Below are positions 6,995-64,000 of a DNA stretch of 64,000 nucleotides, one piece after another. Position 1 is the first letter of the stretch. Every line of letters starts with the position of its first letter. The DNA lies in the IMG/VR virus record IMGVR_UViG_3300010403_000705, positions 248,001-312,000 of that record; one strand, written 5' to 3'. The position numbers and the translations under genes were made by a program. The notes below the pieces were generated by a model that saw only the letters and a program-made list of their open reading frames with translations, searched no databases and was not told where the DNA came from.

Positions 6995-7447
6995 ATGAAA
7001 GTCTATATTCTCGCGGGCGCCAGTGGCAGCGGTAAGAGTCATCTAGCTTCGAAGATATGGGCTAGCCATCCAAAGGTGCTGGTATGTAGCGCCGACGACT
7101 ACCTCTATGATAGCCATGGCACTTATGTGTGGGGCGCGGATAAGCTCGCCGCTGCACACAACGAATGTCTGAAGAAGTTCATTGCTGCTGTTCAAGAAGA
7201 AGTGCCTGTGGTGGTGGTGGATAATACCAATACCACCATAGCAGAGATCGCGCCTTACTACAGCATTGCAGCCGCCTACGGCGCTGAGGTTGAGCTTGTC
7301 ATCCTCTTCTGCAATCCAGAAAAAGCCGTCAACCGTAACAAGCATAATACGCCGGCACCGGTAGTAACTGCCCAGATAAAGCGCCTCGGATGTCAAGAGC
7401 TTCCTTCGTTCTGGAAGTGTTCTATTCAAGTGATGTGCACAGATTGA
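6995..7447 (+). CDS. P-loop nucleotide/polynucleotide kinase (AAA_33-like)
   Basis: GASGSGKS Walker A, CSADDY, VVVDNTN, RNKH lid. Confidence 0.85.
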   Translation: MKVYILAGASGSGKSHLASKIWASHPKVLVCSADDYLYDSHGTYVWGADKLAAAHNECLKKFIAAVQEEVPVVVVDNTNTTIAEIAPYYSIAAAYGAEVELVILFCNPEKAVNRNKHNTPAPVVTAQIKRLGCQELPSFWKCSIQVMCTD

Positions 7448-9063: not shown

Positions 9064-9132
9064 GGCGTGGTAGAAAACCATAACCCATCCGCAAACTTCA
9101 GACATTATGTAGTTGGTGTGAGGTCAATCAAG

Positions 9133-12824: not shown

Positions 12825-12912
12825 GGGCGAATGGCGAAACTGGTAGACGCAGTGGTTTCAAAAACCGCCGAGGTAAAATCTCGTGGGGGTTCGATTCCCC
12901 CTTTGCCCACCA
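12825..12912 (+). tRNA. tRNA-Leu(CAA)
   Basis: GGGCGAA/TTTGCCC acceptor, GTGGT-TTCAAAA-ACCGC anticodon arm, long V-arm, TTCGATT T-loop, encoded CCA. Confidence 0.9.
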
Positions 12913-12937
12913 TGGGATTACTTTGTAATTCCCATCT

Positions 12938-13040
12938 GTCGAGCAGTGGCGGAAACGGATAGACGCTAAGGCAGTATGGCTGAGCTTAGTGATGATAAAC
13001 TATCACTAAGCATGCTGGTTCAAGTCCAGCCCTCGACACC
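12938..13040 (+). ncRNA. aberrant tRNA-like RNA (Leu-type D/T arms, no canonical anticodon arm, 10-bp V-arm)
   Basis: GTCGAG/CTCGAC acceptor, TGGCGGAA..GGATAGACGC, GCTGG-TTCAAGT-CCAGC, GCTTAGTGAT/ATCACTAAGC stem. Confidence 0.6.
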
Positions 13041-13065
13041 GATAGATTCCAATCATGGGAAATAA

Positions 13066-15247: not shown

Positions 15248-15493
15248 ATGATTCTCGTGTCAAACATTAGACAAGATCTTAATAACAGTGGGCTTAACAG
15301 CCAATTGTCAGATGCTGATCTTCTGGGTGTATACGAAAAACTGTTTGCCAAAGGATATGATTATCACAATCATATTCTTTATATCCTTGCAGAGCTTCGT
15401 GGTACATCTCAACGCGAATTGCAAGAGACAATAGACTGGTGTGGTCCTGGTAGCTCCGAGGATATGGCATACTTTGACAAGGTATGTCCGTAA
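15248..15493 (+). CDS. hypothetical protein
   Basis: AGGTG RBS, ORF. Confidence 0.6.
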   Translation: MILVSNIRQDLNNSGLNSQLSDADLLGVYEKLFAKGYDYHNHILYILAELRGTSQRELQETIDWCGPGSSEDMAYFDKVCP

Positions 15494-15866
15494 ACCTCAT
15501 CAAGCAATAAGCACCAAGAGATTGTCATGCCACATCAAAAAAGGATCCCAGGGATCCCATCGGATATATAAACCTATACGATACTTGCGAAATGCAGAAA
15601 GAAAAGGTTTAACATTATGTTCTTCACGTGATGTGAGCGCTAAACTCTGTCAATGGGCTTGGATTTAGCTTTATAGGTAGCTCTCAGTAAAAAGTGAGCT
15701 TAGGATACAAGCTACGTCTGGTAAGATTGACAGAGACTCTAAGAGGGCGGCGCTAACATAAAAAGCCCTGCTAGTTTGTATCACCCATCAAATTAGGAGA
15801 ATACCTAGGAGAATATCAGCCATCAATACGATGGCGCTAATCTCGGATTACCCTCTCACTTGGCGG

Positions 15867-15949
15867 CTGTAATTTGGGGGTTCGAATCCCTCTGTGCTTT
15901 AGGCATAGCTCAATCGGTAAGAGCAATCGCTTTTAAGCGATCATTACAG
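15867..15949 (+). ncRNA. circularly permuted tRNA-like module within a long ORF-free structured region
   Basis: Order T-arm, closed acceptor hairpin, D-arm, anticodon arm, enclosed by CTGTAAT/ATTACAG. Confidence 0.7.
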
Positions 15950-16669
15950 TGTACCTTGTGAGTAAGGCGAAACTATTAGCTCTCCTATCAAAGCTCCCAT
16001 CCAAACACAGGATAAATCAATCCAAGTGCAATTCCTGTTTCCTGTTTTTTTGGAACCGTAAAAACGGTATGATTTACTCCTGACATAATTGTACGCCCGA
16101 TTCACTAACTAGGGCTATAGATACCATAGGGATAACTTAACGCTCTCCCATCAGATCGTAGCGTTACACGGGATGCAAGAGGCTTGCTGGGCGGACAAGG
16201 ATCCATCCGCAATATTGAAGATGCTGAGCATGCCATATATCACCAGGGTTTCCGGCTCAATGGGTTTGGAAACACTTTGATAGATGCAGATCATGACTGA
16301 ATACTCATTCAATAAAACCACCTAACACTTGCTATAACACCCATCATATAAGGCGGGTTAGATAAAGCTGAGGAAACCGTTGGGAAGTTGAGTTTTGATC
16401 GAGACCTTATGATGATTGCGCCTCGCGCATGAGGGTTGGTAGGATACCCATCTATCTACCAAGGCAATGTAGATCAAGACAACCGATATACCACGTCTTG
16501 AAGAACGTGGATCGCCAACGGAGCATTAGGGCTACGCTCAGCGCCCGCCTAATGTTTAACTTGTGGTTAGTGTATAGTTAACAAGAGACCCTTGTATTGT
16601 ACCCATCAATCTTGTTGATTATGTACTGTTCACAAGCTCATTGAAAAGTTATCATATCGAGGTGATATC

Positions 16670-19249
16670 ATGACGCGCGAAGCACCCAAAGGTTTTGAGA
16701 TCATTGTGGCTCCTGTCTGTGGCAGTGAGGAGAATGGCTGGAGAATCTGCGGAAACGATAAATTGCGTCAGGTTGTTCTTGATCCCATCAGCGCGGAGGC
16801 TCTGGCACTCTCAGAGCGTGGTTCTGGGTTGGTGGTCATTTTGCGCCCGCAGTTCAATGAGCCTCATCTGGGCAAATATGCTTTCCGGGAGTATCGCAGT
16901 TTTGATGGTGGTCTGTTTGAGGAGATTCATTTTACCCTCGGCGCCAACACTTCCAAGCAGAAGCGATTGGACAATGAGATCGTTCTTCCTTCGCCGCCCA
17001 TCTCTTAACACCTCTCATGGTGTGTAATGGTCTTGAAAGGTCATCATGCATTGTTACGATCCTTACAACGTATCACATGTGATTGCTTACTTTGGTTACG
17101 AACAAGTTTTTTGCCGCGTTGGCAATTACGATGATGCTGAAGTTCATGGGAACAAGATAGACCGTACCTTCACCCAAGGTCTTGAGAATCATCTTGCCCA
17201 TCGAGTAGGGATACACCCCGAAAACAAGCAGGGCTTTTTGTGGGTTGATAACAGTAAAAAAATCCATTACGGGATGTTCTATGATTGTGACTTTGTGCAC
17301 ATCGAATGGCACACCCATCGTGTATTCAAAGAGTCGGTGCCTAACAACTTCTCCCGCGGCAAATTCATGGTACAAGCCGCTTATCTAGAATATCTGCGGT
17401 TTCCCAATCATGGATCCACCATTCGAGTCACGCAGTACGTTGATGGTCCTAGAGACTTTATTAGGACTTCCAACAGATTCCATAATGAAACGCCCATCGG
17501 TGCTGTTCGTTTTGTAGTAGGTGTTGACAATTCTTTTTGGAAGCTGACTAACTGCGGCGACCAAGGTCTCACAACTACACGAATTAACATTCAGACACAA
17601 GGATACTAAGATGACTGAGAGAGTGAAGCTGTGGCGTCGACGAGATTTGATGTCAAGTAAACGCTTGGCGTCGTCATTGCTGACCGGATTGATGAGCAAT
17701 ACATCTGAGGCATGGAAGAATCCCATCAAGCTGGTTGAGATGTGCTATGCTATCTCTGATGAGTTCGTTCGTCAGTCCAACCGTCGTGGAGAAGGAACGG
17801 GGAAAAAGCGTCGCAAACGCTGATTAAACCTGGCGTTATCATTGTTCCCATCTTTAATGGAGAGTTTCATGGCTAAGGATCTGTTTATCGCAGCGGTATT
17901 TCTCTTGTGGGGCGGCGTCTATTTTGCAACGCCAAAGACGTATTATAATCCTCTCGTGGGATATTATACCGGACGATACACCAATGCCGCGTGGCTATGT
18001 TTCTTTGCGTCACTGGTGTGTGTCTGTGTGGGTCTAAGTGTGCTTCACTAATTCCCATCTCTAACATGTGGGAAGATAAAACATGAGCAAAGATTTTCCC
18101 ATTCCGGTGGTGGTGCTTCGCAAAGAGTTTTCACAGATACGCGGGCGCTCACATGCGGCAACCCGTCAGGAATTTCTGCAAGCTTGTCAAGCATATCTTA
18201 AAGAATACAAGCTACCTGAGACTCCTGACAATTGGGTACATGCTGCGAAGACGTGTCGTATTCACTGTCGTCGATGTGATGGCACGGGAATGTTTATTAC
18301 TGGCATGAGCAATGGTCAGCCCATCGGACCTGGTGGACCTTGTTATCGATGTAACGGCAAGGGTTGGCAGAATGATGCGGATGCTCGGCGCAACTTTGGT
18401 GCTGATATGCATCAAAAAGTAATTCTCTAACAGACCATCGGAAAAAGGAGATGTCATGTTCCTTGAGGAAAATCACGAGTATCTCCAAGTAAGTCGAGCG
18501 CTGAGCGAATTGGTAGCTGCCCTGACCCATCTGGACATTGCTATCCTGTGTAGTGACGCCACTTTGACAGATGCTCGCGCAGCAGTCGTCAAAGGAAAAC
18601 GGCAGCTTGAATTGCGAAAGGCAGAGATTCTGGCAAACCATTATCAATTGTTGGAGAAACATGGTATGCTGTGACAGATAGCATTGTCCTGAAGCCCACT
18701 GCTAAAGAAGAGCATCAGGCAAAAAGGCGATCTAAAAAAGAACGTAAGGGAAAATCTTAACGTTTCCCATCCACCGCACACTAAATAAGGCTCATATGAT
18801 CAATCAGATTGTTGAACAGTTTCTCATTGCTGCTTGTATCGCTACCATTGAGGCATCGGATCGTCTGACTGAGGAGTTTAACAACGCTATGAAAAACAGC
18901 ATCGCCAGCAATGGCTGGGGGATGTTTTCTCCTCCGGATATGGGCAAGATGCATGCCATGGCGGCGCTGGACTATAATGAAAAGCGATGGGTGCCGATGC
19001 TGAGCCTCATCGAATGCTAGCCCATCAGAAGGATTCTATACTATGAATATGAAGTGCGCTCCTGATAATCCCAATGCTGTCTTTTTTGTTATCGATGGAT
19101 TGCGTTGCATAGGCTCCAACCATCGTTGTCGGATGCCCATCATTGAGGATGATGCAATCTGGTGCGGAAGTACCACGGCTCCAGATATGGATAGCTTGTA
19201 CTATACAGATTTTGATGACGAAGAGGATGATCCTGTGGACCACACCTAG
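16670..19249 (+). other. cluster of small hypothetical CDS (16670-17008, 17046-17609, 17611-17823, 17869-18051, 18456-18674, 18796-19020, 19043-19249)
   Basis: Co-directional packed ORFs with RBS; terminator hairpin at 19279-19312. Confidence 0.6.
18083..18430 (+). CDS. protein with DnaJ-type zinc-finger repeats
   Basis: CRRCDGTG and CYRCNGKG (CxxCxGxG). Confidence 0.7.
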   Translation: MSKDFPIPVVVLRKEFSQIRGRSHAATRQEFLQACQAYLKEYKLPETPDNWVHAAKTCRIHCRRCDGTGMFITGMSNGQPIGPGGPCYRCNGKGWQNDADARRNFGADMHQKVIL

Positions 19250-39887: not shown

Positions 39888-39970
39888 GCCGAAGTGGTGG
39901 AATGGCAGACACAGCGGACTCAAAATCCGCCGCCCATAAGGGCATGAGGGTTCAAGTCCCTCCTTCGGTA
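39888..39970 (+). tRNA. tRNA-Leu(CAA), second copy
   Basis: GCCGAAG/CTTCGGT, GCGGA-CTCAAAA-TCCGC, long V-arm, TTCAAGT T-loop. Confidence 0.92.
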
Positions 39971-39994
39971 CTAATCAATTTTAGGAGATGGTAT

Positions 39995-40810
39995 ATGTCT
40001 AAAGGTAAAAAATCAAAATCCATTACTATTCTATACGGTTTGCCAGGAAGTGGTAAATCTACATACGCCAAGGATACTGGTATTTCTGTAGTAGATGCTG
40101 ATGAAATTGGACATAAATTCTTTGCATCTACAAATGAGAGATTTGCGTACTTAGCTAGCAAAGTAGAGTATGTATTGACCTCTAAATATACAGACTCTGT
40201 TATTATTGATGGATTATTTACCACCAATGAACAGTTGAGAAGGATTATAGATTCTCTTTCTTTTCTTTCGGAAAAATGGCAAATCACATTTAAATTGGTT
40301 TACTGGGTCGAGGATCGAGCAGCGTGTCTTGTTAATGATCAAGGAAGGAGAGCAAAAAGTTCCGCTATTTCAATTAATAATCTTCCTTTTGAAAAGCCTG
40401 ATCCTTCAGTAGTTCCTGAGTTTTTCGTTAGCAAAAATAGAATTAAAGAAATGCAAGTAGTGCAAAGATCTCCTGCTCAAATTTGGGCGAAATCACTTGA
40501 TCTTGATTCAAATAAAATGGAATTAAGATCTGAAAGTTGGTCTTTAGGAGGAACATCCGGCAATTGTTGGGACAATGAGTTGAGAAGAATCAGTCCAAGT
40601 TCGCCACTAGAATTTGTGGAGTTCGACGAGCTATTGCAAAAGGTTTGTCCTAACCTTTCTTATTTGCAATATAAAGAGATCAATAGATCTTGTTGCAGAC
40701 TTGATGAACACGAATCAACTGATTATTATAGTGGTTCGGAAACAATTGTCCAACATGTGTGCGATATAAATGCATTATATAATAAACTTTCTAACTTAGG
40801 GATTATTTAA
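39995..40810 (+). CDS. P-loop kinase (PNK-like), paralog of 34832
   Basis: AGGAG RBS; ILYGLPGSGKST; same C-terminal domain (W.LGG..G.CWD, DYY.G). Confidence 0.82.
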   Translation: MSKGKKSKSITILYGLPGSGKSTYAKDTGISVVDADEIGHKFFASTNERFAYLASKVEYVLTSKYTDSVIIDGLFTTNEQLRRIIDSLSFLSEKWQITFKLVYWVEDRAACLVNDQGRRAKSSAISINNLPFEKPDPSVVPEFFVSKNRIKEMQVVQRSPAQIWAKSLDLDSNKMELRSESWSLGGTSGNCWDNELRRISPSSPLEFVEFDELLQKVCPNLSYLQYKEINRSCCRLDEHESTDYYSGSETIVQHVCDINALYNKLSNLGII

Positions 40811-42540: not shown

Positions 42541-42632
42541 GGGAGCATAGCTCAATGGTTAGAGCAACCGCCTTATAAGCGGTTTACCGGCTGATTACCG
42601 GAAGCGTGGGGGTTCAAGTCCCTCTGCTCCTA
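42541..42632 (+). tRNA. tRNA with TAT anticodon (Ile) and a long variable arm
   Basis: GGGAGCA/TGCTCCT, GCTC..GAGC, ACCGC-CTTATAA-GCGGT, CCGG/CCGG V-stem, GGGGG-TTCAAGT-CCCTC. Confidence 0.8.
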
Positions 42633-42944
42633 CTAAGACCCATCGGCTTACATCTTTAGGTGAATAATTATGGATACAGGAACTATATCATATCATCCTG
42701 ATAATATAGGCGGAAAGCTTATTATTAGCGTTATGTCAAATGGTAAACTTGCAATAGATGTAAAATCACATGGATATAATCTTTACATGTTTACTTTTGA
42801 TTTGGAGTCAGCCAAGAATTTGAGAGATGCTCTTTGTTCTGCCATTGAACAAATGGCAATTAACATAAATTTTCCGTCAGATTCATAATCATCTTCCTGC
42901 TATCTTTTTATAAGAGCAAAGTGATTGTTGAGAGTAGACTTTCC

Positions 42945-49025: not shown

Positions 49026-49100
49026 GGGAGTTGTAATGCTCAATGGTAGAGCTACCAATAGAAGCTTGGTGGTTGAAGGTTCAACTCCTTCTGACTCCCC
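49026..49100 (+). tRNA. aberrant tRNA-Phe(GAA)-like
   Basis: GGGAGTTG/TGACTCCC, GCTC..GAGC, ACCAA-TAGAAGC-TTGGT, GAAGG-TTCAACT-CCTTC. Confidence 0.6.
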
Positions 49101-58226: not shown

Positions 58227-59450
58227 ATGTCAGATTGGAAGCCACAAGTTGTAAAAATCTGCAAAGTAGAAAAGCATTTTAATGCTGATACCTTGGATAT
58301 TGTTTTCACTTCAATTGGTGACTATCCAATTGTTACCAAGCTGGGTGAGTACCACGTAGGTGATTTAGCAGTATATATTCCAATTGACACCATCGTTCCT
58401 GATGTTAATGAATTCTTTTTCCTTTGTCCCAAACATGAAGGAAGTGTCATTCCTAAATATGAATTAGGTTGTGTTCCAGAGCGCTATCGACGAATTAAAG
58501 CAAAGAAGATTCGTGGACAATATTCACAAGGCATGTTGATTGCGTGCCCTCTGTACATTAATGGTCATCTTGTGTCTGCATCTGAGATGATGCAGAGTGG
58601 CATGCCTGAGGAAACAATTCTATCTCTTGATGTAGTTAAGATTTTGGGTCTTACTAAGTGGGAAGAAGAGGAAGAAGAAGCTTCCGATCTTTATGCAAAG
58701 AAAGCTAAAGAACACACGCAAACAGAAAAAAGACCTGAAGGTTGGTCTATTCCTTACTATGATATTGATGGTTTGAGAAAGTGTTCAGATTGTTTGGCTC
58801 CTGATGAAGAGATTGTTTTAACTGAAAAAATTCATGGGGCGAATGGTAGTTTTTGCCATGATGGATCTAGGTTGTGGGTAAAATCTCGCAATTTGTATAA
58901 GAAAGGGGAAATTGAGGTTCCAGTATATGAAGAGTTAGTTAGTGATGTTATTGAAGAAACTGGAGAGCAAATTAAGCAGCATGTGCGTGTAGGAACCAAG
59001 ATGATTCCCTCTACTGATCAGTGGTGGGAAGTTGCACGACGCTTGGGTTTAGAAGACAAGTTATCTCAATATCCAGGTCTGGTTTTCTTTGGCGAGGTAG
59101 CTGGACAGGTTAAAGGTTTCCGATACGATGCTAAAATTGTAGATGAAAAACTACAACCATGTCTATATCTTTTTGATGTATGGGATCTCAAATCCATGAG
59201 GTATTTGGATTATGATGATCGCATTTCATTGATTCAGTCGCTTGATTTAACGCCAGCCCCACAACTTTATAGAGGTCCTTGGCTTGGTAAAGAAAAAATG
59301 TATCCTTATGCTGAAGGAAAAACAACTACTAGCGGTAAGCATATTCGAGAAGGTTTTGTCTTGAATACAATTAAAGAAAGATTTGAGCCGCGATTAAATG
59401 GTAGGATGCAAGCTAAGTTGGTCGGAGAATCCTACAATCTTCTAAAGTAA
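58227..59450 (+). CDS. RNA ligase, Rnl2/DRB0094-like
   Basis: N-terminal H.NAD.L...GD..VY.P.D, RG..SQG; TEKIHGAN motif I, FGEV.G, LFDV, REGFV, K.V.E.Y. Confidence 0.88.
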   Translation: MSDWKPQVVKICKVEKHFNADTLDIVFTSIGDYPIVTKLGEYHVGDLAVYIPIDTIVPDVNEFFFLCPKHEGSVIPKYELGCVPERYRRIKAKKIRGQYSQGMLIACPLYINGHLVSASEMMQSGMPEETILSLDVVKILGLTKWEEEEEEASDLYAKKAKEHTQTEKRPEGWSIPYYDIDGLRKCSDCLAPDEEIVLTEKIHGANGSFCHDGSRLWVKSRNLYKKGEIEVPVYEELVSDVIEETGEQIKQHVRVGTKMIPSTDQWWEVARRLGLEDKLSQYPGLVFFGEVAGQVKGFRYDAKIVDEKLQPCLYLFDVWDLKSMRYLDYDDRISLIQSLDLTPAPQLYRGPWLGKEKMYPYAEGKTTTSGKHIREGFVLNTIKERFEPRLNGRMQAKLVGESYNLLK

Positions 59451-59896
59451 AGGTAAATGTGATCATGACAAGAGATAAAAATCTTATCCGTTTTAACTTT
59501 TCTGATATTAAAGAAGCACTACAATTGCTCGGAGAAAAACGCGGGATGAGTGGTTCTTTTGAAGTTTTAGAGAGAATTACAGCTACTATATCTGAATTTG
59601 ATAATAGTATTTTAAAAGCTGGCGTAGAATATATTCTTGTTCCAAAGTGATAGAAGTTTTTCACAAAATTCATTATTGTGTTCACCTGTGGTAATGAATA
59701 ATTTAGTACGAATTGAGTTCGGCGAACGGTGAAGGTTTTCATAAAGAATAAGGCATGACAAAGAGACAGATGCTAACTAATAGATAGGCGCGAGTTGACT
59801 TGAAATTTGGCACTTTAGACGCAGTGTCAGGTTGGAAAAGAAAAATACTTTCCCCAGTGACCCTATAAGTGCTACTGTCATAGTAGTTATGTCCTA

Positions 59897-59973
59897 GCGT
59901 GTTGACGTCAATGGTGGCGTAATGTTATCTTGTCTCGATAACATTGACGGTTCGAATCCGTGGACACGTCCCA
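59897..59973 (+). tRNA. aberrant tRNA-Asp(GTC)-like with a 9-bp anticodon stem
   Basis: GCGTGTT/GACACGT, AATGTTATC-TTGTCTC-GATAACATT, ACGG-TTCGAAT-CCGT, 3' CCCA. Confidence 0.55.
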
Positions 59974-60086
59974 TCACATAAAATAAGTGAATCACAAATA
60001 TGAATCAAGACGAATTTATGAACGAAGTAGATCAGTTTTTTGTTGGTTAGCTTATTCTCAACTTTCTTGATGAAGGATTCGAAATA

Positions 60087-60707
60087 ATGCGTAAGATGCC
60101 TTGTCTTTTAGTTCGTGAATTTAATGGACCGAATTCATTTACATTAACGGATCAAATTACTACTGGTTGTGAATGGGTATTAAAAGGAGAAGGTATCGCA
60201 TCTCGTAAATGGGATGGTACGGCGTGCATAGTAATTAATGGAGAATTATTCAAAAGGTTTGATGCCAAAAGAAAACCGGACGGATCTTATAAATTGCCGC
60301 CTAATGGTGCCATCCCATGTTGTGATCCAGATCCTATTACTGGACATCACCCACATTGGATCAAGTGTTTACCTAATCATCCCCCTGATCAATATCATAT
60401 ACAAGCCTGGCAAAAACTAGGACAAGCTATTGCTCGTACCAAACAAGATGGAAGACGGTTTGTTAGTCCGCCGGACGGTACTTACGAATTGATTGGTCCT
60501 CAAATTGGAGCTAATGCAGAAGGTGTAGAGCAGTTAATGTTTAAACTTCACGGTGCTGATATCTTGGAGGTTCCAAGAACCTTGGAAGGTATTCGTAAAT
60601 TTATCTCTGATAATATGATGGAAGGTGTAGTATTCTCCAATAAAAATGGTTTAATGTGCAAGATTAGGCGCAAGGACTTTGGTCTTCCCTGGGGAAAAAA
60701 TAAATGA
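60087..60707 (+). CDS. RNA ligase, DUF5565/C12orf29 (Rlig1)-like
   Basis: RKMPC, RKWDGTAC motif I, GH.PHW, GTYELIGP.I..N, HG, MEGVVF, KIRR.DFGL.W. Confidence 0.78.
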   Translation: MRKMPCLLVREFNGPNSFTLTDQITTGCEWVLKGEGIASRKWDGTACIVINGELFKRFDAKRKPDGSYKLPPNGAIPCCDPDPITGHHPHWIKCLPNHPPDQYHIQAWQKLGQAIARTKQDGRRFVSPPDGTYELIGPQIGANAEGVEQLMFKLHGADILEVPRTLEGIRKFISDNMMEGVVFSNKNGLMCKIRRKDFGLPWGKNK

Positions 60708-60893
60708 ATGCCTTCAAGTATTTGTGTGCAGTAACAGTGATTACTTTCATTTGGTTACTAGGAAAGATTGTAGAGAATCCAAGATGGAAGATTTAAAGTA
60801 CGCTCTTGGGTTTGCTTTGATAGCATTTGTGTATTGTGCTATTATCATTTTGACGTATCCTGGTCCATAGATTATTATTTGTAGGGATAATTA

Positions 60894-61136
60894 ATGTTAC
60901 CAATTAAAATCCAATATGGCACTCTACCCCGTCGAGGGCAATTTAATCGAGCTTTATTAGAAGCTATGCCACCAAATAGACCCATCCGTTTTCGTGGTGA
61001 TAGTAGAATGGGTGATGCAGATGTTTCTGCTACAGATTTTTTTCTAGAACTTCGTAATGCCCATCGCGAAGGCACTGCGGATGCTATGGAATGGATTAGA
61101 CAGCATTTGCTTTTTATTTCTATTCATTGGGTTTAG
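60894..61136 (+). CDS. hypothetical protein
   Basis: AGGGA RBS, ORF. Confidence 0.6.
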   Translation: MLPIKIQYGTLPRRGQFNRALLEAMPPNRPIRFRGDSRMGDADVSATDFFLELRNAHREGTADAMEWIRQHLLFISIHWV

Positions 61137-61173
61137 ATCAAACGTACAATAACTATATAAGGAAGATATACCT

Positions 61174-62739
61174 GTGACACTCAAGAGAAATGTATCGAAT
61201 GTTCGGGAGAGAGACGCTCTTACTGGAAGATTCAAAAAGAAGTTGGCTGCTCAAGCTCTCGCCGTTGCAAACTCAACCGCTATAGTTGAGACCCAACAAT
61301 TAGCGGCATCAGTGACAAGTAAGCCGCAACCAAAAAATCTTAACTCACAACAACTGTTCAGATTTTTTCATAGAAGTAAAGTTCGTAATCCTATTTACGT
61401 TCGTGTTCTAGAACGTAGTTTATGTGATGTAAGAGATGCTTATGGATCTATTATTCAGCCGATCCATACTCTTTCACATACCGATTTGATGATTAATAAT
61501 ATGCAGAATTATGATTATCGAGTCTATGTCAATTTTTCACCTCTTCAAGGAAATTCTGATAGCAGATATTTTGACAACTCACATCAATTTATCCTTTTTG
61601 CAGAAGGTGATGAAGGGTATGACGAAATATACAAGGCATTCGAATCAGTGCGATTAGCAAATATTTATCGTAATCTGCATCACGATTTTACTATTGGCTG
61701 TGATCCAGAAGTTTTTGTTGAGAAGAAAGAGGGCGGTCTGATTCCCGCTTTTATGTTTCTTCCCAGCAAAGAGCGCCCTACTCTCACTGCTAATAATCGT
61801 GACGGCGGTCGCCTTGGTAATTTCAATGGTTTCGGTGGATGCACTATGTATTGGGATGGTTATCAAGCCGAGTTCACTACTAAGGCGCAGACATGCTTAG
61901 GTCATCATTGTGATTCTATTGCGGCAGGACTTACTGGAGTTTATCGTGCAGCCAATGAAAAATTCCCTGGTGCAAAACTAAGTATGCGATCAGTGTTTCA
62001 TATTGATCCAGAGGCTTTGATGTCAGATGAGGATGAGCATGTTGCTTTTGGCTGCATGCCATCTTTCAATGTGTATGGGTTGAAAGTAAATATGCCTCCT
62101 GCACGTGAGGTGCCTTTTAGGTCTGCCGGCGGTCATATTCACTTCGGTACTAACCGACTGACGCATGCTCAAGCTGAACCAATGGTAAAAGCATTAGATG
62201 CTATTCTGGGAGTAGCGTGCGTGTCTTTGTTCGCAGAGTTTGATGATCCTAATCGTCGAAAGCTGTATGGTCTTCCTGGAGAGTATCGATTGCCTCCGCA
62301 TGGATTAGAGTATCGACCTCTGAGTAACGCTTGGTTGTCGCATCCTATGATTACTAATTTGGTAATCGACCTAGCTCGTAAGTGTGTAGTCTTTGGTCGT
62401 AAGAATCTATTGTCTTCGTTTTGGAAGACAACAGAAGAGGAAACGATTGATACTATCATTCGATGCGATGTGGAAACATCGCATAAAATCTTAGAGCGTA
62501 ACCGAGAAGTTCTCAAACAGCTTCTCAAAGCTTCCTATCAACGTGCTGGTGATAGTGATCTTGAGACATTATTTAATGTCTTCAAGAATGGTATCGGCTC
62601 AGCTATCAAAAATCCTCGTGATTTCGAGACTAATTGGAAGTTCAAAACTGGGTGGATTGCACATTATGGCGGCGCGGGTGAGCCCAATGTTGCGACGTTT
62701 ATGAGTAATCGTCGTCACAATCCCAAGTATCTTATGTGA
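61174..62739 (+). CDS. phiEco32-like COOH-NH2 ligase type 2
   Basis: TIGCDPEVF, DGYQAEF, FGCMP.FN.Y, RSAGGHIHFG, RRKLYG.PGEYR...HGLEYRPLSN.W. Confidence 0.85.
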   Translation: MTLKRNVSNVRERDALTGRFKKKLAAQALAVANSTAIVETQQLAASVTSKPQPKNLNSQQLFRFFHRSKVRNPIYVRVLERSLCDVRDAYGSIIQPIHTLSHTDLMINNMQNYDYRVYVNFSPLQGNSDSRYFDNSHQFILFAEGDEGYDEIYKAFESVRLANIYRNLHHDFTIGCDPEVFVEKKEGGLIPAFMFLPSKERPTLTANNRDGGRLGNFNGFGGCTMYWDGYQAEFTTKAQTCLGHHCDSIAAGLTGVYRAANEKFPGAKLSMRSVFHIDPEALMSDEDEHVAFGCMPSFNVYGLKVNMPPAREVPFRSAGGHIHFGTNRLTHAQAEPMVKALDAILGVACVSLFAEFDDPNRRKLYGLPGEYRLPPHGLEYRPLSNAWLSHPMITNLVIDLARKCVVFGRKNLLSSFWKTTEEETIDTIIRCDVETSHKILERNREVLKQLLKASYQRAGDSDLETLFNVFKNGIGSAIKNPRDFETNWKFKTGWIAHYGGAGEPNVATFMSNRRHNPKYLM

Positions 62740-62759
62740 TCATTTGTATATATTTTGTT

Positions 62760-62793
62760 TATGGGGAAGATTGGTTAACCAATCTTCCCCATA
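62760..62793. terminator. perfect 34-bp palindrome between the two ligase genes
   Basis: TATGGGGAAGATTGGTT|AACCAATCTTCCCCATA. Confidence 0.65.
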
Positions 62794-62888
62794 ATATTTT
62801 GTAATATAGCAATGCTTAGCTTACCCATCCTCACTGTATAAGCATCATGTAAGTACATAATGTAAGCCTTTGGTTAAAAGGATTCAAA

Positions 62889-64000
62889 ATGAAGATTAAA
62901 ATTTCTGATTTGATTAGCACGGGACATTCTGCTGTTGTTCAACATAAGAGTGGATATATTGGTCCGACTTATTATTTGAAGCGAAATAGTAATGAACTTT
63001 CTCGCGATTTGTATGCTGATGGATATTTTTTACCGGATGAAAAGTTTATTATCGTCAATGCTTATAGGCAAGGCGAAGTAACGCATATGTCAGTGGCTAA
63101 TTCATATGATTTTAAAGTACGTGGATATTATGTACCTTATGATCAGGAATTTGATCTGTTAGAGAATGATGATCTTAGTTTTGCTTGGGACGAGGTTAGA
63201 AAATCTAATGTGTCAAGATATCTTCATCATGGATTTACTATTGGTTCTGATCCAGAGATTTTTGTTGAGGATCGAAATGGAAATATGATTCCTGCTTTCC
63301 TATTCCTTGGTTCTAAGGAAGAACCCAATCATACTGCGATAGGTGATCATTATGGTTCCGATGGTGGTCATCCTATGTACTGGGATGGTTTTCAAGCAGA
63401 GTTTACCACTCGTGCCGGACATTGCTTGGAGTATCATACAGACTCAGTAGCTGCTGGTATTAAAGGCGTCTATGATGCAGCTAGGAAAAAATTTCCAGAT
63501 GCACGTCTTAGCTGTCGTAATGTTTTTGATATCTCTAATGATATGCTACAAACTGCTAAAGAAGAGCATGTAGCTTTCGGATGTATGCCGAGCTTTAATG
63601 CTTATGGATTGCAGGTGAATATGCCTCCTGCTCGTGAGGTGTCTTTCAGATCTGCTGGCGGTCATATTCATTTTGGTCTAGGTAAAATTACCAATGACTC
63701 TGCTGTCAGTATTGTTAAAGCATTAGATATGATTGTCGGTGTATCCTGTGTTAGTCTTTTCGATAAATTTGATAATCGAAAAAGAAGAATGATGTATGGT
63801 CTTCCTGGAGAGTATCGATTGCCTCCGCATGGATTAGAGTATCGTACACTTTCCAATGCCTGGCTTATTCATCCTTTCATTATGAATCTGGTGATCGATA
63901 TTGCTAGAAAAGCTGTGGTATTGAGCCAACGTGGTTGGCTAGATCTGTGGGTAAGTGACGAAGAAGAAACGATTGATACTATTATGAGATGCGATGTTGA
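62889..64000 (+). CDS. second phiEco32-like COOH-NH2 ligase type 2 (runs off window)
   Basis: AAGGA RBS, ATG at 62889; TIGSDPEIF, WDGFQAEF, RSAGGHIHFG, YGLPGEYRLPPHGLEYR; absent from ORF track because there is no stop in the window. Confidence 0.85.
   Translation, partial: MKIKISDLISTGHSAVVQHKSGYIGPTYYLKRNSNELSRDLYADGYFLPDEKFIIVNAYRQGEVTHMSVANSYDFKVRGYYVPYDQEFDLLENDDLSFAWDEVRKSNVSRYLHHGFTIGSDPEIFVEDRNGNMIPAFLFLGSKEEPNHTAIGDHYGSDGGHPMYWDGFQAEFTTRAGHCLEYHTDSVAAGIKGVYDAARKKFPDARLSCRNVFDISNDMLQTAKEEHVAFGCMPSFNAYGLQVNMPPAREVSFRSAGGHIHFGLGKITNDSAVSIVKALDMIVGVSCVSLFDKFDNRKRRMMYGLPGEYRLPPHGLEYRTLSNAWLIHPFIMNLVIDIARKAVVLSQRGWLDLWVSDEEETIDTIMRCDV

What the first reader, a model, noticed from the sequence alone, without database searches (positions are those of the whole stretch)
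15855..15962. Circularly permuted tRNA opened at the variable arm
Seen, 5' to 3': CTGTAAT (15867), T-arm GGGGG-TTCGAAT-CCCTC (15876-15892), a short closed acceptor-like hairpin TGCT-tta-GGCA, TA, D-arm GCTC-AATCGGTAA-GAGC, anticodon arm ATCGC-TTTTAA-GCGAT (6-nt loop, Lys-like), then ATTACAG pairing with CTGTAAT, extended by CTCAC/GTGAG. Both halves closely resemble the long-V-arm tRNA at 42541 (GCATAGCTCAAT.G.T.AGAGCAA.CGC; GGGGGTTC.A.TCCCTCTG). Established: bacterial YrlA Y RNAs are T-acceptor-D permuted tRNA mimics, but they are opened at the anticodon stem. Here the anticodon arm is retained and the connection is through the variable arm. Inference: a non-chargeable tRNA mimic displaying an anticodon loop, for example a decoy for anticodon nucleases, or a precursor needing ligation and cleavage by the phage RNA ligases.
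Basis: partly seen in the sequence, partly recalled or inferred. Interest (0 to 1): 0.8.

Follow-up and report, generated by a model that had tools for sequence, protein, structure and literature searches.

The report
Permuted tRNA mimic in a megaphage
A huge uncultured phage carries a rearranged copy of one of its own tRNA genes that should fold like a tRNA but with its amino-acid end sealed shut, so it is most likely a tRNA look-alike RNA rather than a working tRNA; it is a new shape of a known kind of RNA, and so far a single example.

Summary
On the + strand, 5' to 3', lie a closing strand, UU, a canonical T-arm, a short closed acceptor-like hairpin, UA, a canonical D-arm, an anticodon-like hairpin with a 6-nt loop, and the complementary closing strand. 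Its flank-to-flank pairing exceeded all 300 shuffles and all 400 same-geometry genomic controls.

Both halves derive from a paralogue of the long-V-arm tRNA at 42541. All stem differences from that tRNA keep the pairs, including one compensatory pair. Rfam sees only the T/acceptor/D core as YrlA-like (28 bits, gathering score 69).

It is not a canonical YrlA. It has no GNCGAA motif, the window has no Ro60, Band-7 or DUF2828 gene, and the RNA ends leave at the variable-arm position. It cannot mature into a tRNA, because the acceptor has only 4-6 bp and the anticodon-like loop 6 nt.

No homologue was found in viral, metagenome or genome scans, so conservation and expression are untested. Best reading: a non-chargeable tRNA mimic of the YrlA / band-7-tRNA kind, linked to tRNA damage and repair. 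A neutral rearranged tRNA pseudogene remains a real rival.

The parts
15806..15987 (+). Whole predicted structured RNA: a long interrupted basal helix plus a tRNA-like five-way junction. True ends are unknown.
   Evidence: MFE and pair probabilities. Flank-flank pairing test. It lies in a 1.18-kb stretch, 15494-16669, where the JGI gene calls show only one 32-aa minus-strand call.
15806..15812 (+). Basal helix H1, 5' strand (UAGGAGA). Pairs with 15981-15987.
   Evidence: 7 bp, mean pair probability 0.97.
15819..15835 (+). Side hairpin GCCAUC-AAUAC-GAUGGC in the 5' strand of the basal helix.
   Evidence: 6 bp, pair probability 1.0.
15836..15841 (+). Helix H2, 5' strand (GCUAAU). Pairs with 15975-15980.
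   Evidence: 6 bp, pair probability 0.98.
15852..15859 (+). Helix H3, 5' strand (CCUCUCAC). Pairs with 15958-15962 and 15965-15967, with a 2-nt bulge.
15866..15873 (+). Closing helix H4, 5' strand (GCUGUAAU), at the variable-arm position. Pairs with 15943-15950.
   Evidence: 8 bp, pair probability 0.96.
15874..15875 (+). UU linker. The second U is the equivalent of tRNA position 48 and could form the Levitt pair with A15 (15913).
   Evidence: Read from the sequence. The rule of A15:U48 or G15:C48 comes from PMC4201824.
15876..15892 (+). T-arm GGGGG-UUCGAAU-CCCUC, with U54 U55 C56 A58 and the G53-C61 pair.
   Evidence: 18 of 20 identical to the T-arm region of tRNA 42541.
15893..15907 (+). Closed acceptor-like hairpin. 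Either UGCU-UUA-GGCA (4 bp) after a UG bulge, or 6 bp if U8 and A9 are drawn in.
   Evidence: Aligns to the YrlA 'AS' hairpin.
15908..15924 (+). D-arm GCUC-AAUCGGUAA-GAGC, with A14, A15, G18, G19 and A21.
15926..15941 (+). Anticodon-like hairpin AUCGC-UUUUAA-GCGAU, with a 6-nt loop.
   Evidence: Relative to tRNA 42541 (ACCGC-CUUAUAA-GCGGU) it has one compensatory pair (C28:G42 to U:A), one base deleted and one loop substitution.
15943..15950 (+). Closing helix H4, 3' strand (AUUACAGU).
15958..15987 (+). 3' strands of H3, H2 and H1.

Best explanation
The locus encodes a stable, non-coding, non-chargeable tRNA mimic of the same general kind as bacterial and phage YrlA Y RNAs and the predicted band-7-associated tRNA.

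Origin. It arose from a tandem (dimeric) copy of the phage's own long-variable-arm tRNA, the one like the gene at 42541. The T-arm comes from the upstream copy. The D-arm and anticodon arm come from the downstream copy. The two acceptor strands were trimmed to a short closed hairpin. The flanks evolved into a long helix that leaves the body where a class-II variable arm would.

Predicted fold and working. The RNA should fold into the tRNA L-shape, because all elbow and core tertiary-contact nucleotides are kept. It would display the elbow and an anticodon-type arm. It cannot be cleaved by RNase P, given CCA, charged, or used in decoding. It would therefore work by being bound as a tRNA look-alike by tRNA-recognising protein(s) in the tRNA damage/repair conflict. 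It would act either as a cofactor or handle for phage RNA-repair enzymes, or as bait for a host tRNA-targeting nuclease.

Shown here: the anatomy, the stability, the excess flank complementarity, descent from a 42541-like tRNA, and structure-preserving divergence.

Inferred only: transcription, the L-shaped fold, the protein partner and the biological role.
For: - The five-way junction is recovered by unconstrained folding.
- The closing helix is far more complementary than shuffles or genomic controls.
- All 3 changed stem bases relative to tRNA 42541 preserve pairs, including one compensatory pair. The other 6 changes fall in loops and spare U8, A14, A15:U48, G18 G19, U54 U55 C56 and A58.
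- Five G-U pairs, together with the tRNA-consensus loops, fit the + strand, which is the strand of all genes in the window.
- The T/acceptor/D core aligns to Rfam YrlA.
- The element lies in a 1.18-kb stretch with only one 32-aa minus-strand gene call.
- The neighbourhood is rich in RNA functions: tRNAs, a DEAH helicase, three AAA_33 kinases and an RNA ligase.
- In other phage contigs, acceptor-closed tRNA mimics sit next to TROVE, DUF2828, Band_7 and RNA-ligase genes.
- The Band_7-linked family also keeps an anticodon hairpin directly after the D-arm.
- The published model derives YrlA from dimeric tRNA transcripts (bioRxiv 10.1101/312249).
Against: - It is a single example. There is therefore no covariation or conservation evidence.
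- There is no expression evidence, and no recognisable promoter or terminator.
- No partner gene (TROVE, Band_7, DUF2828) lies in the window.
- The comparison with the paralogue cannot tell on which lineage the changes occurred.
- The window holds another aberrant tRNA-like gene at 12937-13043, so tRNA-gene decay may be common in this genome.
Confidence: 0.45

Rival explanations
1. A neutral by-product: a rearranged tRNA pseudogene left by tandem duplication of a 42541-like gene followed by deletions, with no function of its own.
For: Both halves are paralogous to one tRNA of the same genome. The anticodon loop has lost a base. The acceptor is truncated. No relatives or partner genes were found. 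A second aberrant tRNA-like gene sits at 12937-13043.
Against: Duplication of a 4-bp variable arm cannot by itself give about 29 bp of flank-flank pairing spread over 70 nt (0 of 300 shuffles and 0 of 400 genomic controls). The acceptor strands were trimmed symmetrically into a hairpin. No stem pair is broken, and one pair is compensated.
Confidence: 0.25
2. A true Y RNA: it binds a Ro60/TROVE protein (or a Band-7 or DUF2828 analogue) encoded elsewhere in the 433-448 kb genome, through its long basal helix.
For: The core matches YrlA. It has a long interrupted basal helix like Y RNAs. Huge phages do encode TROVE proteins (L396, contig of 436 kb; L442, contig of 385 kb). A Ro60-adjacent phage Y RNA (L391, same sequence as L003) also carries a hairpin after the D-arm.
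Against: There is no GNCGAAN0-1G motif in the 5' strand; the nearest is GGCGGCUG at 15862-69. No TROVE, vWA or Band_7 gene lies from -15.8 kb to +48 kb. Published YrlAs lie within 4 kb of rsr on the same strand. The contig is not among the best 80 TROVE loci in IMG/VR, though that is a weak negative.
Confidence: 0.1
3. A cis-acting structural element of a longer transcript, for example a processing or stability signal, rather than a free small RNA.
For: It sits in a long gene-free gap with two other locally structured stretches, 15630-15760 and 16510-16660. All genes run on the same strand. No own promoter or terminator was recognised.
Against: A 4-6 bp acceptor is a poor RNase P substrate (PMC4201824). 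Keeping a complete set of tRNA tertiary-contact bases and an anticodon-type arm is more than a processing signal needs.
Confidence: 0.1
4. A circularly permuted pre-tRNA that is ligated through its ends and opened at the acceptor loop to give a working tRNA, as in Cyanidioschyzon.
For: The 3' half lies upstream of the 5' half. The ends are paired. RNA ligase and kinase genes are present in the window.
Against: The acceptor has only 4-6 bp with a 3-nt loop, and there is no discriminator or CCA. The anticodon loop has 6 nt. The closing helix shows no bulge-helix-bulge motif. No bacterial splicing endonuclease is known.
Confidence: 0.03

Closest known systems
YrlA Y RNAs (Rfam RF02553; Chen et al. 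2014, PMC4201824; Wang et al. 2018, bioRxiv 10.1101/312249)
   Same: The order is T-arm, closed acceptor-like stem-loop, UA, D-arm. The elbow and core tertiary bases are conserved. The acceptor end is blocked. A long helix is formed by the RNA's 5' and 3' parts. A tRNA origin is proposed, from dimeric tRNA.
   Different: In YrlA the ends form the anticodon stem and there is no anticodon loop. A V stem-loop often precedes the T-arm. A GNCGAAN0-1G motif lies near the 5' end, and the gene is within 4 kb of rsr. Here the anticodon arm is a closed hairpin, the ends leave at the variable-arm position, the motif is absent, there is no rsr nearby, and the score is 28 bits against a gathering score of 69.
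Band-7-associated tRNA (predicted by Burroughs and Aravind 2016, as cited in bioRxiv 10.1101/312249), and the Band_7-linked double-module RNAs seen here (L308, L241, L270, L292, L296, L348)
   Same: They are tRNA-like RNAs of RNA-repair neighbourhoods. The loci seen here have T-arm, closed acceptor, D-arm, then an anticodon hairpin, which is the same local order as the window element.
   Different: Those RNAs have two modules, 7-nt anticodon loops, a conserved pseudoknot-like tail, and a Band_7 gene just downstream. The window element has one module, a 6-nt loop, a closing helix and no Band_7 gene.
Circularly permuted tRNA genes of Cyanidioschyzon merolae, some green algae and Thermofilum (Soma 2007, Maruyama 2010 and Chan 2011, as cited)
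   Same: The 3' half is encoded upstream of the 5' half, the acceptor is closed in the primary transcript, and the ends are paired.
   Different: Those mature into normal tRNAs: full 7-bp acceptor, 7-nt anticodon loop, and a splicing-endonuclease motif at the junction. None of these is present here.
Deinococcus radiodurans Yrn1
   Same: Modelled with an anticodon-like arm of 5 bp and a 6-nt loop (PMC4201824).
   Different: The order of the arms is different, the D-arm is doubtful, and it is bound by Rsr through a conserved helix.
The phage's own tRNA at 42541-42633 (called Ile, anticodon TAT, 24-nt variable region)
   Same: It is the likely parent. Identity is 33 of 38 in the 5' half and 18 of 20 in the 3' half.
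   Different: It has normal gene order, an open 7-bp acceptor and a 7-nt anticodon loop.

Membership tests
YrlA (RF02553) | T-arm, closed acceptor-like stem-loop, UA and D-arm in that order, with tRNA elbow bases | tested here: met
   cmscan aligns 15874-15924 to model positions 29-81. U8, A14, A15:U48, G18 G19, U54 U55 C56 and A58 are read from the sequence.
YrlA (RF02553) | Score at or above the Rfam gathering score | tested here: not met
   28.3 bits against 69. Only a local match was found, with no match to the flanking helices.
YrlA (RF02553) | GNCGAAN0-1G motif near the 5' end (likely Ro60 contact) | tested here: not met
   The 5' strand 15806-15873 has no such motif; the closest is GGCGGCTG at 15862-69. 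GGCGAAAC at 15966-73 is on the 3' side and lacks the final G.
YrlA (RF02553) | 5' and 3' parts pair to form the anticodon-stem equivalent, with no anticodon loop | tested here: not met
   The anticodon-type arm is a closed hairpin at 15926-41. The ends pair between positions 44 and 48.
YrlA (RF02553) | Encoded within about 4 kb of a Ro60/TROVE gene on the same strand | tested here: not met
   There is no TROVE or vWA hit in any ORF of 200 aa or more in the window. hhalign of a phage TROVE profile against the two unassigned ORFs above 400 aa gave probability 0.1. The JGI gene calls within +/-10 kb carry no such Pfam family. The rest of the genome was not readable.
Circularly permuted tRNA gene (matures to a tRNA) | 3' half upstream of 5' half | tested here: met
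Circularly permuted tRNA gene (matures to a tRNA) | Full 7-bp acceptor stem with discriminator, and a 7-nt anticodon loop | tested here: not met
   The acceptor has 4-6 bp closed by UUA, and the loop is UUUUAA.
Circularly permuted tRNA gene (matures to a tRNA) | Bulge-helix-bulge motif at the paired ends | tested here: not met
   The closing helix is 8 bp, followed by an asymmetric internal loop of 2 and 3 nt with a 2-bp island.
Band-7-associated tRNA | Adjacent Band_7/SPFH gene | tested here: not met
   No Band_7 hit was found in the window ORFs scanned. It is present next to the double-module RNAs.
Ordinary tRNA gene | Called by ARAGORN, or by Rfam tRNA at its gathering score | tested here: not met
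   Not called by ARAGORN. RF00005 gives 18.7 bits against 29 for 15899-15966.

The most novel reading that the evidence does not exclude
The element is a purpose-built bait. It would be an uncharged, translation-inert tRNA body presenting a Lys/Ile-type anticodon arm. In one version it soaks up a host anticodon nuclease as a decoy. In another version its cleavage is read by the phage's RNA-repair machinery as an alarm, making it a sentinel substrate. If so, it and the Band_7-linked phage RNAs, whose anticodon loops differ from member to member (GUU, GAU, GUA, GAA, UUU), would be a general class of phage anticodon-displaying tRNA mimics.
Probability: 0.12. Interest if true: 0.85.

Novelty: new variant of a known kind. 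Interest (0 to 1): 0.55.

Why it matters
Acceptor-closed tRNA mimics such as YrlA are widespread, but what their tRNA-like part binds is still unknown. This element shows that the same design can be built with the anticodon arm kept and the handle attached at the variable-arm position.

Its parent tRNA is still recognisable in the same genome. That makes it a young example of the proposed route from dimeric tRNA to Y-like RNA.

If it is expressed, it offers a simple construct for asking which tRNA-binding proteins, such as repair enzymes or anticodon nucleases, recognise such mimics. As a single sequence with no expression data, it does not yet change what is known.

Tried and rejected
Searches for relatives, none of which found a homologue:
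- blastn of the 1-kb region against 50,697 phage records gave no match.
- The HrpA-like helicase and the neighbouring 187-aa ORF found only the source contig itself.
- A viral pattern with a Lys-like loop found only the element itself.
- An exhaustive IMG/VR scan with GTTCRANTCC-N10-17-TAGCTCAAT gave 45 loci. Only the window element has T/AS/D, then an anticodon-like hairpin, then a closing stem.
- The genome scan gave 7 loci, all ordinary Y RNAs or adjacent tRNAs.
- A script that looked for a hairpin after the D-arm plus a closing stem, run on the viral loci fetched up to that point, returned only adjacent ordinary tRNAs apart from the element itself.

Search for a Ro60 gene in the rest of the genome:
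- A TROVE-profile locus search kept the best 80 of more than 314 hits, without this contig. That is an uninformative negative.

Motifs considered and dropped:
- GGATTAC is not enriched.
- TAGGAGAATA is not enriched; elsewhere in the window it looks like a ribosome-binding site.
- There are no repeats of the element in the window.

Alternative readings rejected:
- The minus strand. It folds as well (z -4.0), but it loses the tRNA-consensus loops and turns five G-U pairs into A-C mismatches.
- An attP or integration remnant. No integrase is nearby, and attP would carry only a 3' tRNA part.
- Two-piece tmRNA. Rfam gives no match.

Literature:
- The Burroughs and Aravind 2016 paper could not be read. 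It is used only as cited by others.

Full report
WHAT IS THERE.
- closing strand CTGTAAT (15867-73), then TT
- T-arm GGGGG-TTCGAAT-CCCTC (15876-92)
- TG, then the short hairpin TGCT-TTA-GGCA (15895-15905), then TA
- D-arm GCTC-AATCGGTAA-GAGC (15908-24), then A
- hairpin ATCGC-TTTTAA-GCGAT (15926-41), then C
- ATTACAG (15943-49)
- further out, CTCAC (15855-59) pairing with GTGAG (15958-62)

Unconstrained folding of 15850-15970 returns exactly this five-way junction (-42.5 kcal/mol, z -3.1). ARAGORN does not call a tRNA here. Rfam recognises only the T-arm / closed acceptor / D-arm core, as YrlA model positions 29-81. The score is 28.3 bits against a gathering score of 69, with E 9e-4 in a 1-kb search and 0.06 over the whole window.

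MORE THAN CHANCE, AND LARGER THAN REPORTED. UAGGAGA (15806-12) pairs with UCUCCUA (15981-87). GCUAAU (15836-41) pairs with AUUAGC (15975-80). CCUCUCAC (15852-59) pairs with GUGAG-UA-AGG (15958-67). A side hairpin sits at 15819-35. The whole gives -71.3 kcal/mol, z -4.2, and none of 200 shuffles does as well.

I tested the flanks alone. Co-folding 15800-15873 with 15943-15995 gains -22.0 kcal/mol. Dinucleotide shuffles give -5.4 +/- 2.9 (0 of 300 reach it). Pairs of window segments with the same lengths and spacing also never reach it (0 of 400, best -20.4). A sliding z-score scan shows the element as the strongest structure signal in 15400-16700 when both strands are counted; on the + strand alone 16510-16660 scores about as well.

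The minus strand folds about as well. However, the T-loop and D-loop match the tRNA consensus only on the + strand. The fold also holds five G-U pairs that would be A-C mismatches on the other strand. All genes of the window are on the + strand.

tRNA-LIKE IN DETAIL. In tRNA numbering the element keeps:
- U8 and A9
- A14
- A15 with U48 (a Levitt pair of the A:U type)
- G18 and G19
- A21
- U54, U55, C56 and A58
- the G53-C61 pair

This is read directly. The bases that matter are those listed for YrlA and tRNA in PMC4201824 and bioRxiv 10.1101/312249. An L-shaped fold is therefore plausible, but it is inferred, not shown.

The acceptor equivalent is only 4 bp (UGCU/GGCA) after a UG bulge, or 6 bp if U8 and A9 are drawn in. 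It is closed by UUA. There is no discriminator or CCA. RNase P cleaved only the YrlA with a 7-bp acceptor stem, so this RNA should stay closed. The anticodon-type loop has 6 nt.

ORIGIN. The 5' half (acceptor remnant, D-arm, anticodon arm) matches the tRNA at 42541-42633 at 33 of 38 aligned columns. That is the best match among the six tRNAs of the window. The T-arm region matches at 18 of 20.

The differences are informative:
- The D-stem and T-stem are identical.
- The anticodon stem differs by one compensatory pair (C28:G42 in 42541, U:A here).
- The acceptor remnant differs by an A-U to G-U change.
- All the other changes lie in loops and spare the conserved bases.
- One base is lost at the stem-loop border, which turns CUUAUAA into UUUUAA.

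No pair is broken. This fits selection for the fold. The caveat is that, without an outgroup, some changes may have happened in the working tRNA's lineage.

The parent tRNA has a 24-nt variable region. The element is what results if two tandem copies are cut within their variable arms and the acceptor strands and spacer between them are trimmed to a hairpin. That is the published dimeric-tRNA route to YrlA, except that the anticodon arm of the second copy is kept. A 4-bp variable-arm stem cannot by itself explain about 29 bp of flank pairing.

CONTEXT. The window is part of IMGVR_UViG_3300010403_000705 (432,844 bp). The original JGI contig Ga0134123_10000001 has 447,633 bp. It is a megaphage-sized contig with no close relative in the phage records.

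The JGI gene calls leave 15494-16669 free apart from one 32-aa minus-strand call. The neighbouring 187-aa gene has no homologue but itself among 5.8 billion proteins. PHROGs names none of ten ORFs scanned between 11.3 and 20.3 kb.

The wider region is rich in RNA functions:
- AAA_33 kinases at 6995, 34814 and 39902
- an HrpA-like DEAH helicase at 9067
- tRNAs at 12825, 21790, 39888, 42541, 49027 and 54196
- an RNA ligase with a PHA02142 OB-fold at 58227

No ORF of 200 aa or more in the window has a TROVE, vWA, Band_7 or DUF2828 domain. The two unassigned ORFs above 400 aa do not match a phage TROVE profile. The other roughly 380 kb of the genome could not be read with these tools.

RELATIVES. 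None was found; the section Tried and rejected lists the searches. The decisive comparative test, a closing stem conserved and covarying in relatives, therefore could not be run.

WHAT THE SCANS DID SHOW. Phage contigs hold many acceptor-closed tRNA mimics. They fall into at least three families.
- Family A has a GNCG(A/T)AG motif, GGTTAC(C/T)TC, usually a V hairpin before the T-arm, and GCTAAA after the D-arm. It sits beside TROVE genes. One member (L391, same sequence as L003) instead has a GNRA-capped hairpin after the D-arm. L209 shows the same order, but its neighbourhood was not checked. A hairpin in that place therefore occurs in at least one Ro60-linked Y RNA.
- Family B has a closing stem followed by CAGCAA. 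It sits beside DUF2828+DUF7788 genes, AAA ATPases or T4-Rnl1-type ligases.
- Family C has two T/acceptor/D modules and then an anticodon hairpin with a proper 7-nt loop, and the anticodon differs between members. A pseudoknot-like tail follows, and a Band_7 gene lies just downstream where the fetched locus is long enough to show it. A WYL-WCX regulator, a PF04308 protein or a PHA02142-type RNA ligase lies nearby in several of the loci. It is probably the band-7-associated tRNA predicted by Burroughs and Aravind, which I know only through.

None of the three reaches the YrlA gathering score. The window element shares the T/acceptor/D core with all three. It shares the retained anticodon hairpin with family C. 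It shares none of their flanking motifs or partner genes.

HOW IT MOST LIKELY WORKS. I commit to a non-chargeable tRNA mimic. It would be an L-shaped body with the elbow and an anticodon-type arm exposed, the acceptor end sealed, and a long helical handle at the variable-arm position. tRNA-recognising protein(s) in the tRNA damage/repair conflict would bind it. Confidence is 0.45.

The class association with RNA repair is established for relatives in the literature and was seen in my loci. For this element it is inference. I cannot decide whether it serves phage repair enzymes as a cofactor or diverts a host anticodon nuclease as bait. The bait reading is the most novel one not excluded (probability about 0.12).

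Rivals, in order:
- a neutral rearranged pseudogene (0.25), helped by the presence of another aberrant tRNA-like gene at 12937-13043
- a true Y RNA whose Ro60-type partner is encoded elsewhere (0.10)
- a cis-acting structure of a longer transcript (0.10)
- a permuted pre-tRNA that matures to a tRNA (0.03), which the short acceptor and 6-nt loop argue against

VERDICT. The topological interpretation is supported, and the functional inference is untested. The element is a new variant of a known kind: YrlA-like, acceptor-closed tRNA mimics. It is distinguished by a retained anticodon-type arm and an exit at the variable-arm position, and its parent tRNA is still present in the same genome. Interest is moderate (0.55). 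The anatomy is real and neat, but this is a single copy without conservation or expression evidence.

Noticed in passing
window 12937-13043 (+): A second aberrant tRNA-like RNA lies just after tRNA-Leu(CAA) (12825-12912) and a 9-bp hairpin (12913-34). It has a canonical T-arm GCTGG-TTCAAGT-CCAGC, an open acceptor GTCGAG/CTCGAC followed by A-CCG, and a Leu-like D-arm. Its 'anticodon arm' has only about 4 bp and a 3-nt loop, and an 11-bp hairpin sits in the variable-arm position. ARAGORN and Rfam do not call it. MFE z is -3.45.
   Followed up: partly
window 15630-15760 (+) and 16510-16660 (+): Two further locally structured stretches lie in the same 1.18-kb gene-free gap (z -3.7 and about -3.5). 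The first has a 10-bp stem CTCTGTCAAT/ATTGACAGAG. Neither matches an Rfam family.
   Followed up: partly
window 42541-42633 (+): The tRNA called Ile(TAT) has an unusual 24-nt variable region for an Ile tRNA: a 4-bp CCGG stem with a 7-nt loop CTGATTA. It is the likely parent of the permuted element.
   Followed up: partly
window 49027-49099 (+); window 39902-40810: One tRNA was found only by the permissive Rfam scan (41 bits) and was missed by ARAGORN and by the gathering-threshold run. Separately, the ORF listed from 39902 starts inside tRNA-Leu 39888-39971, so its true start is probably later.
   Followed up: no
L308:375-858(-), L320:533-951(-), L348:1079-1498(+), L241:863-1281(-), L292:1221-1639(-), L270:5434-5853(-), L296:1392-1811(-): A family of large phage RNAs. 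Each has one or two T-arm/closed-acceptor/D-arm modules, then an anticodon hairpin with a 7-nt loop whose anticodon differs between members (GUU, GAU, GUA, GAA, UUU). Most members then carry a tail of the form GAAG..CACC..CTTC..AAAAA..GGTG. In the longer loci a Band_7/SPFH gene follows, and a WYL-WCX regulator, a PF04308 RNase H-like gene or a PHA02142-OB RNA ligase lies nearby in several. No Rfam family matches. It is probably the 'band-7-associated tRNA' predicted in 2016.
   Followed up: partly
L067, L204, L166, L178, L202, L102, L134, L374, L378, L384, L098, L013 (coordinates): A second family of phage acceptor-closed tRNA mimics. It is marked by a closing stem followed by CAGCAA and an anticodon-like hairpin before the T-arm. 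It lies next to DUF2828+DUF7788 genes (L067, L204), AAA ATPases (L166, L178, L202) or T4-Rnl1-type RNA ligases (L102, L134). It scores below the YrlA gathering score.
   Followed up: partly
L391:2704-2830 (same sequence as L003), and L209: L391 (same sequence as L003) is a Ro60-adjacent phage Y RNA with a GNRA-capped hairpin after the D-arm instead of a V hairpin before the T-arm. L209 has the same motifs and the same order, but its neighbouring genes were not checked. The position of the extra arm therefore varies among these Y-like RNAs.
   Followed up: partly
window 58227-64000: The RNA ligase (PHA02142 OB-fold plus RNA_ligase) is followed by two phiEco32-type COOH-NH2 ligase-like genes (61174-62739, and an ORF from about 62853). 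Their homologues lie in loci that carry the Band_7-linked and the CAGCAA-type tRNA mimics.
   Followed up: no
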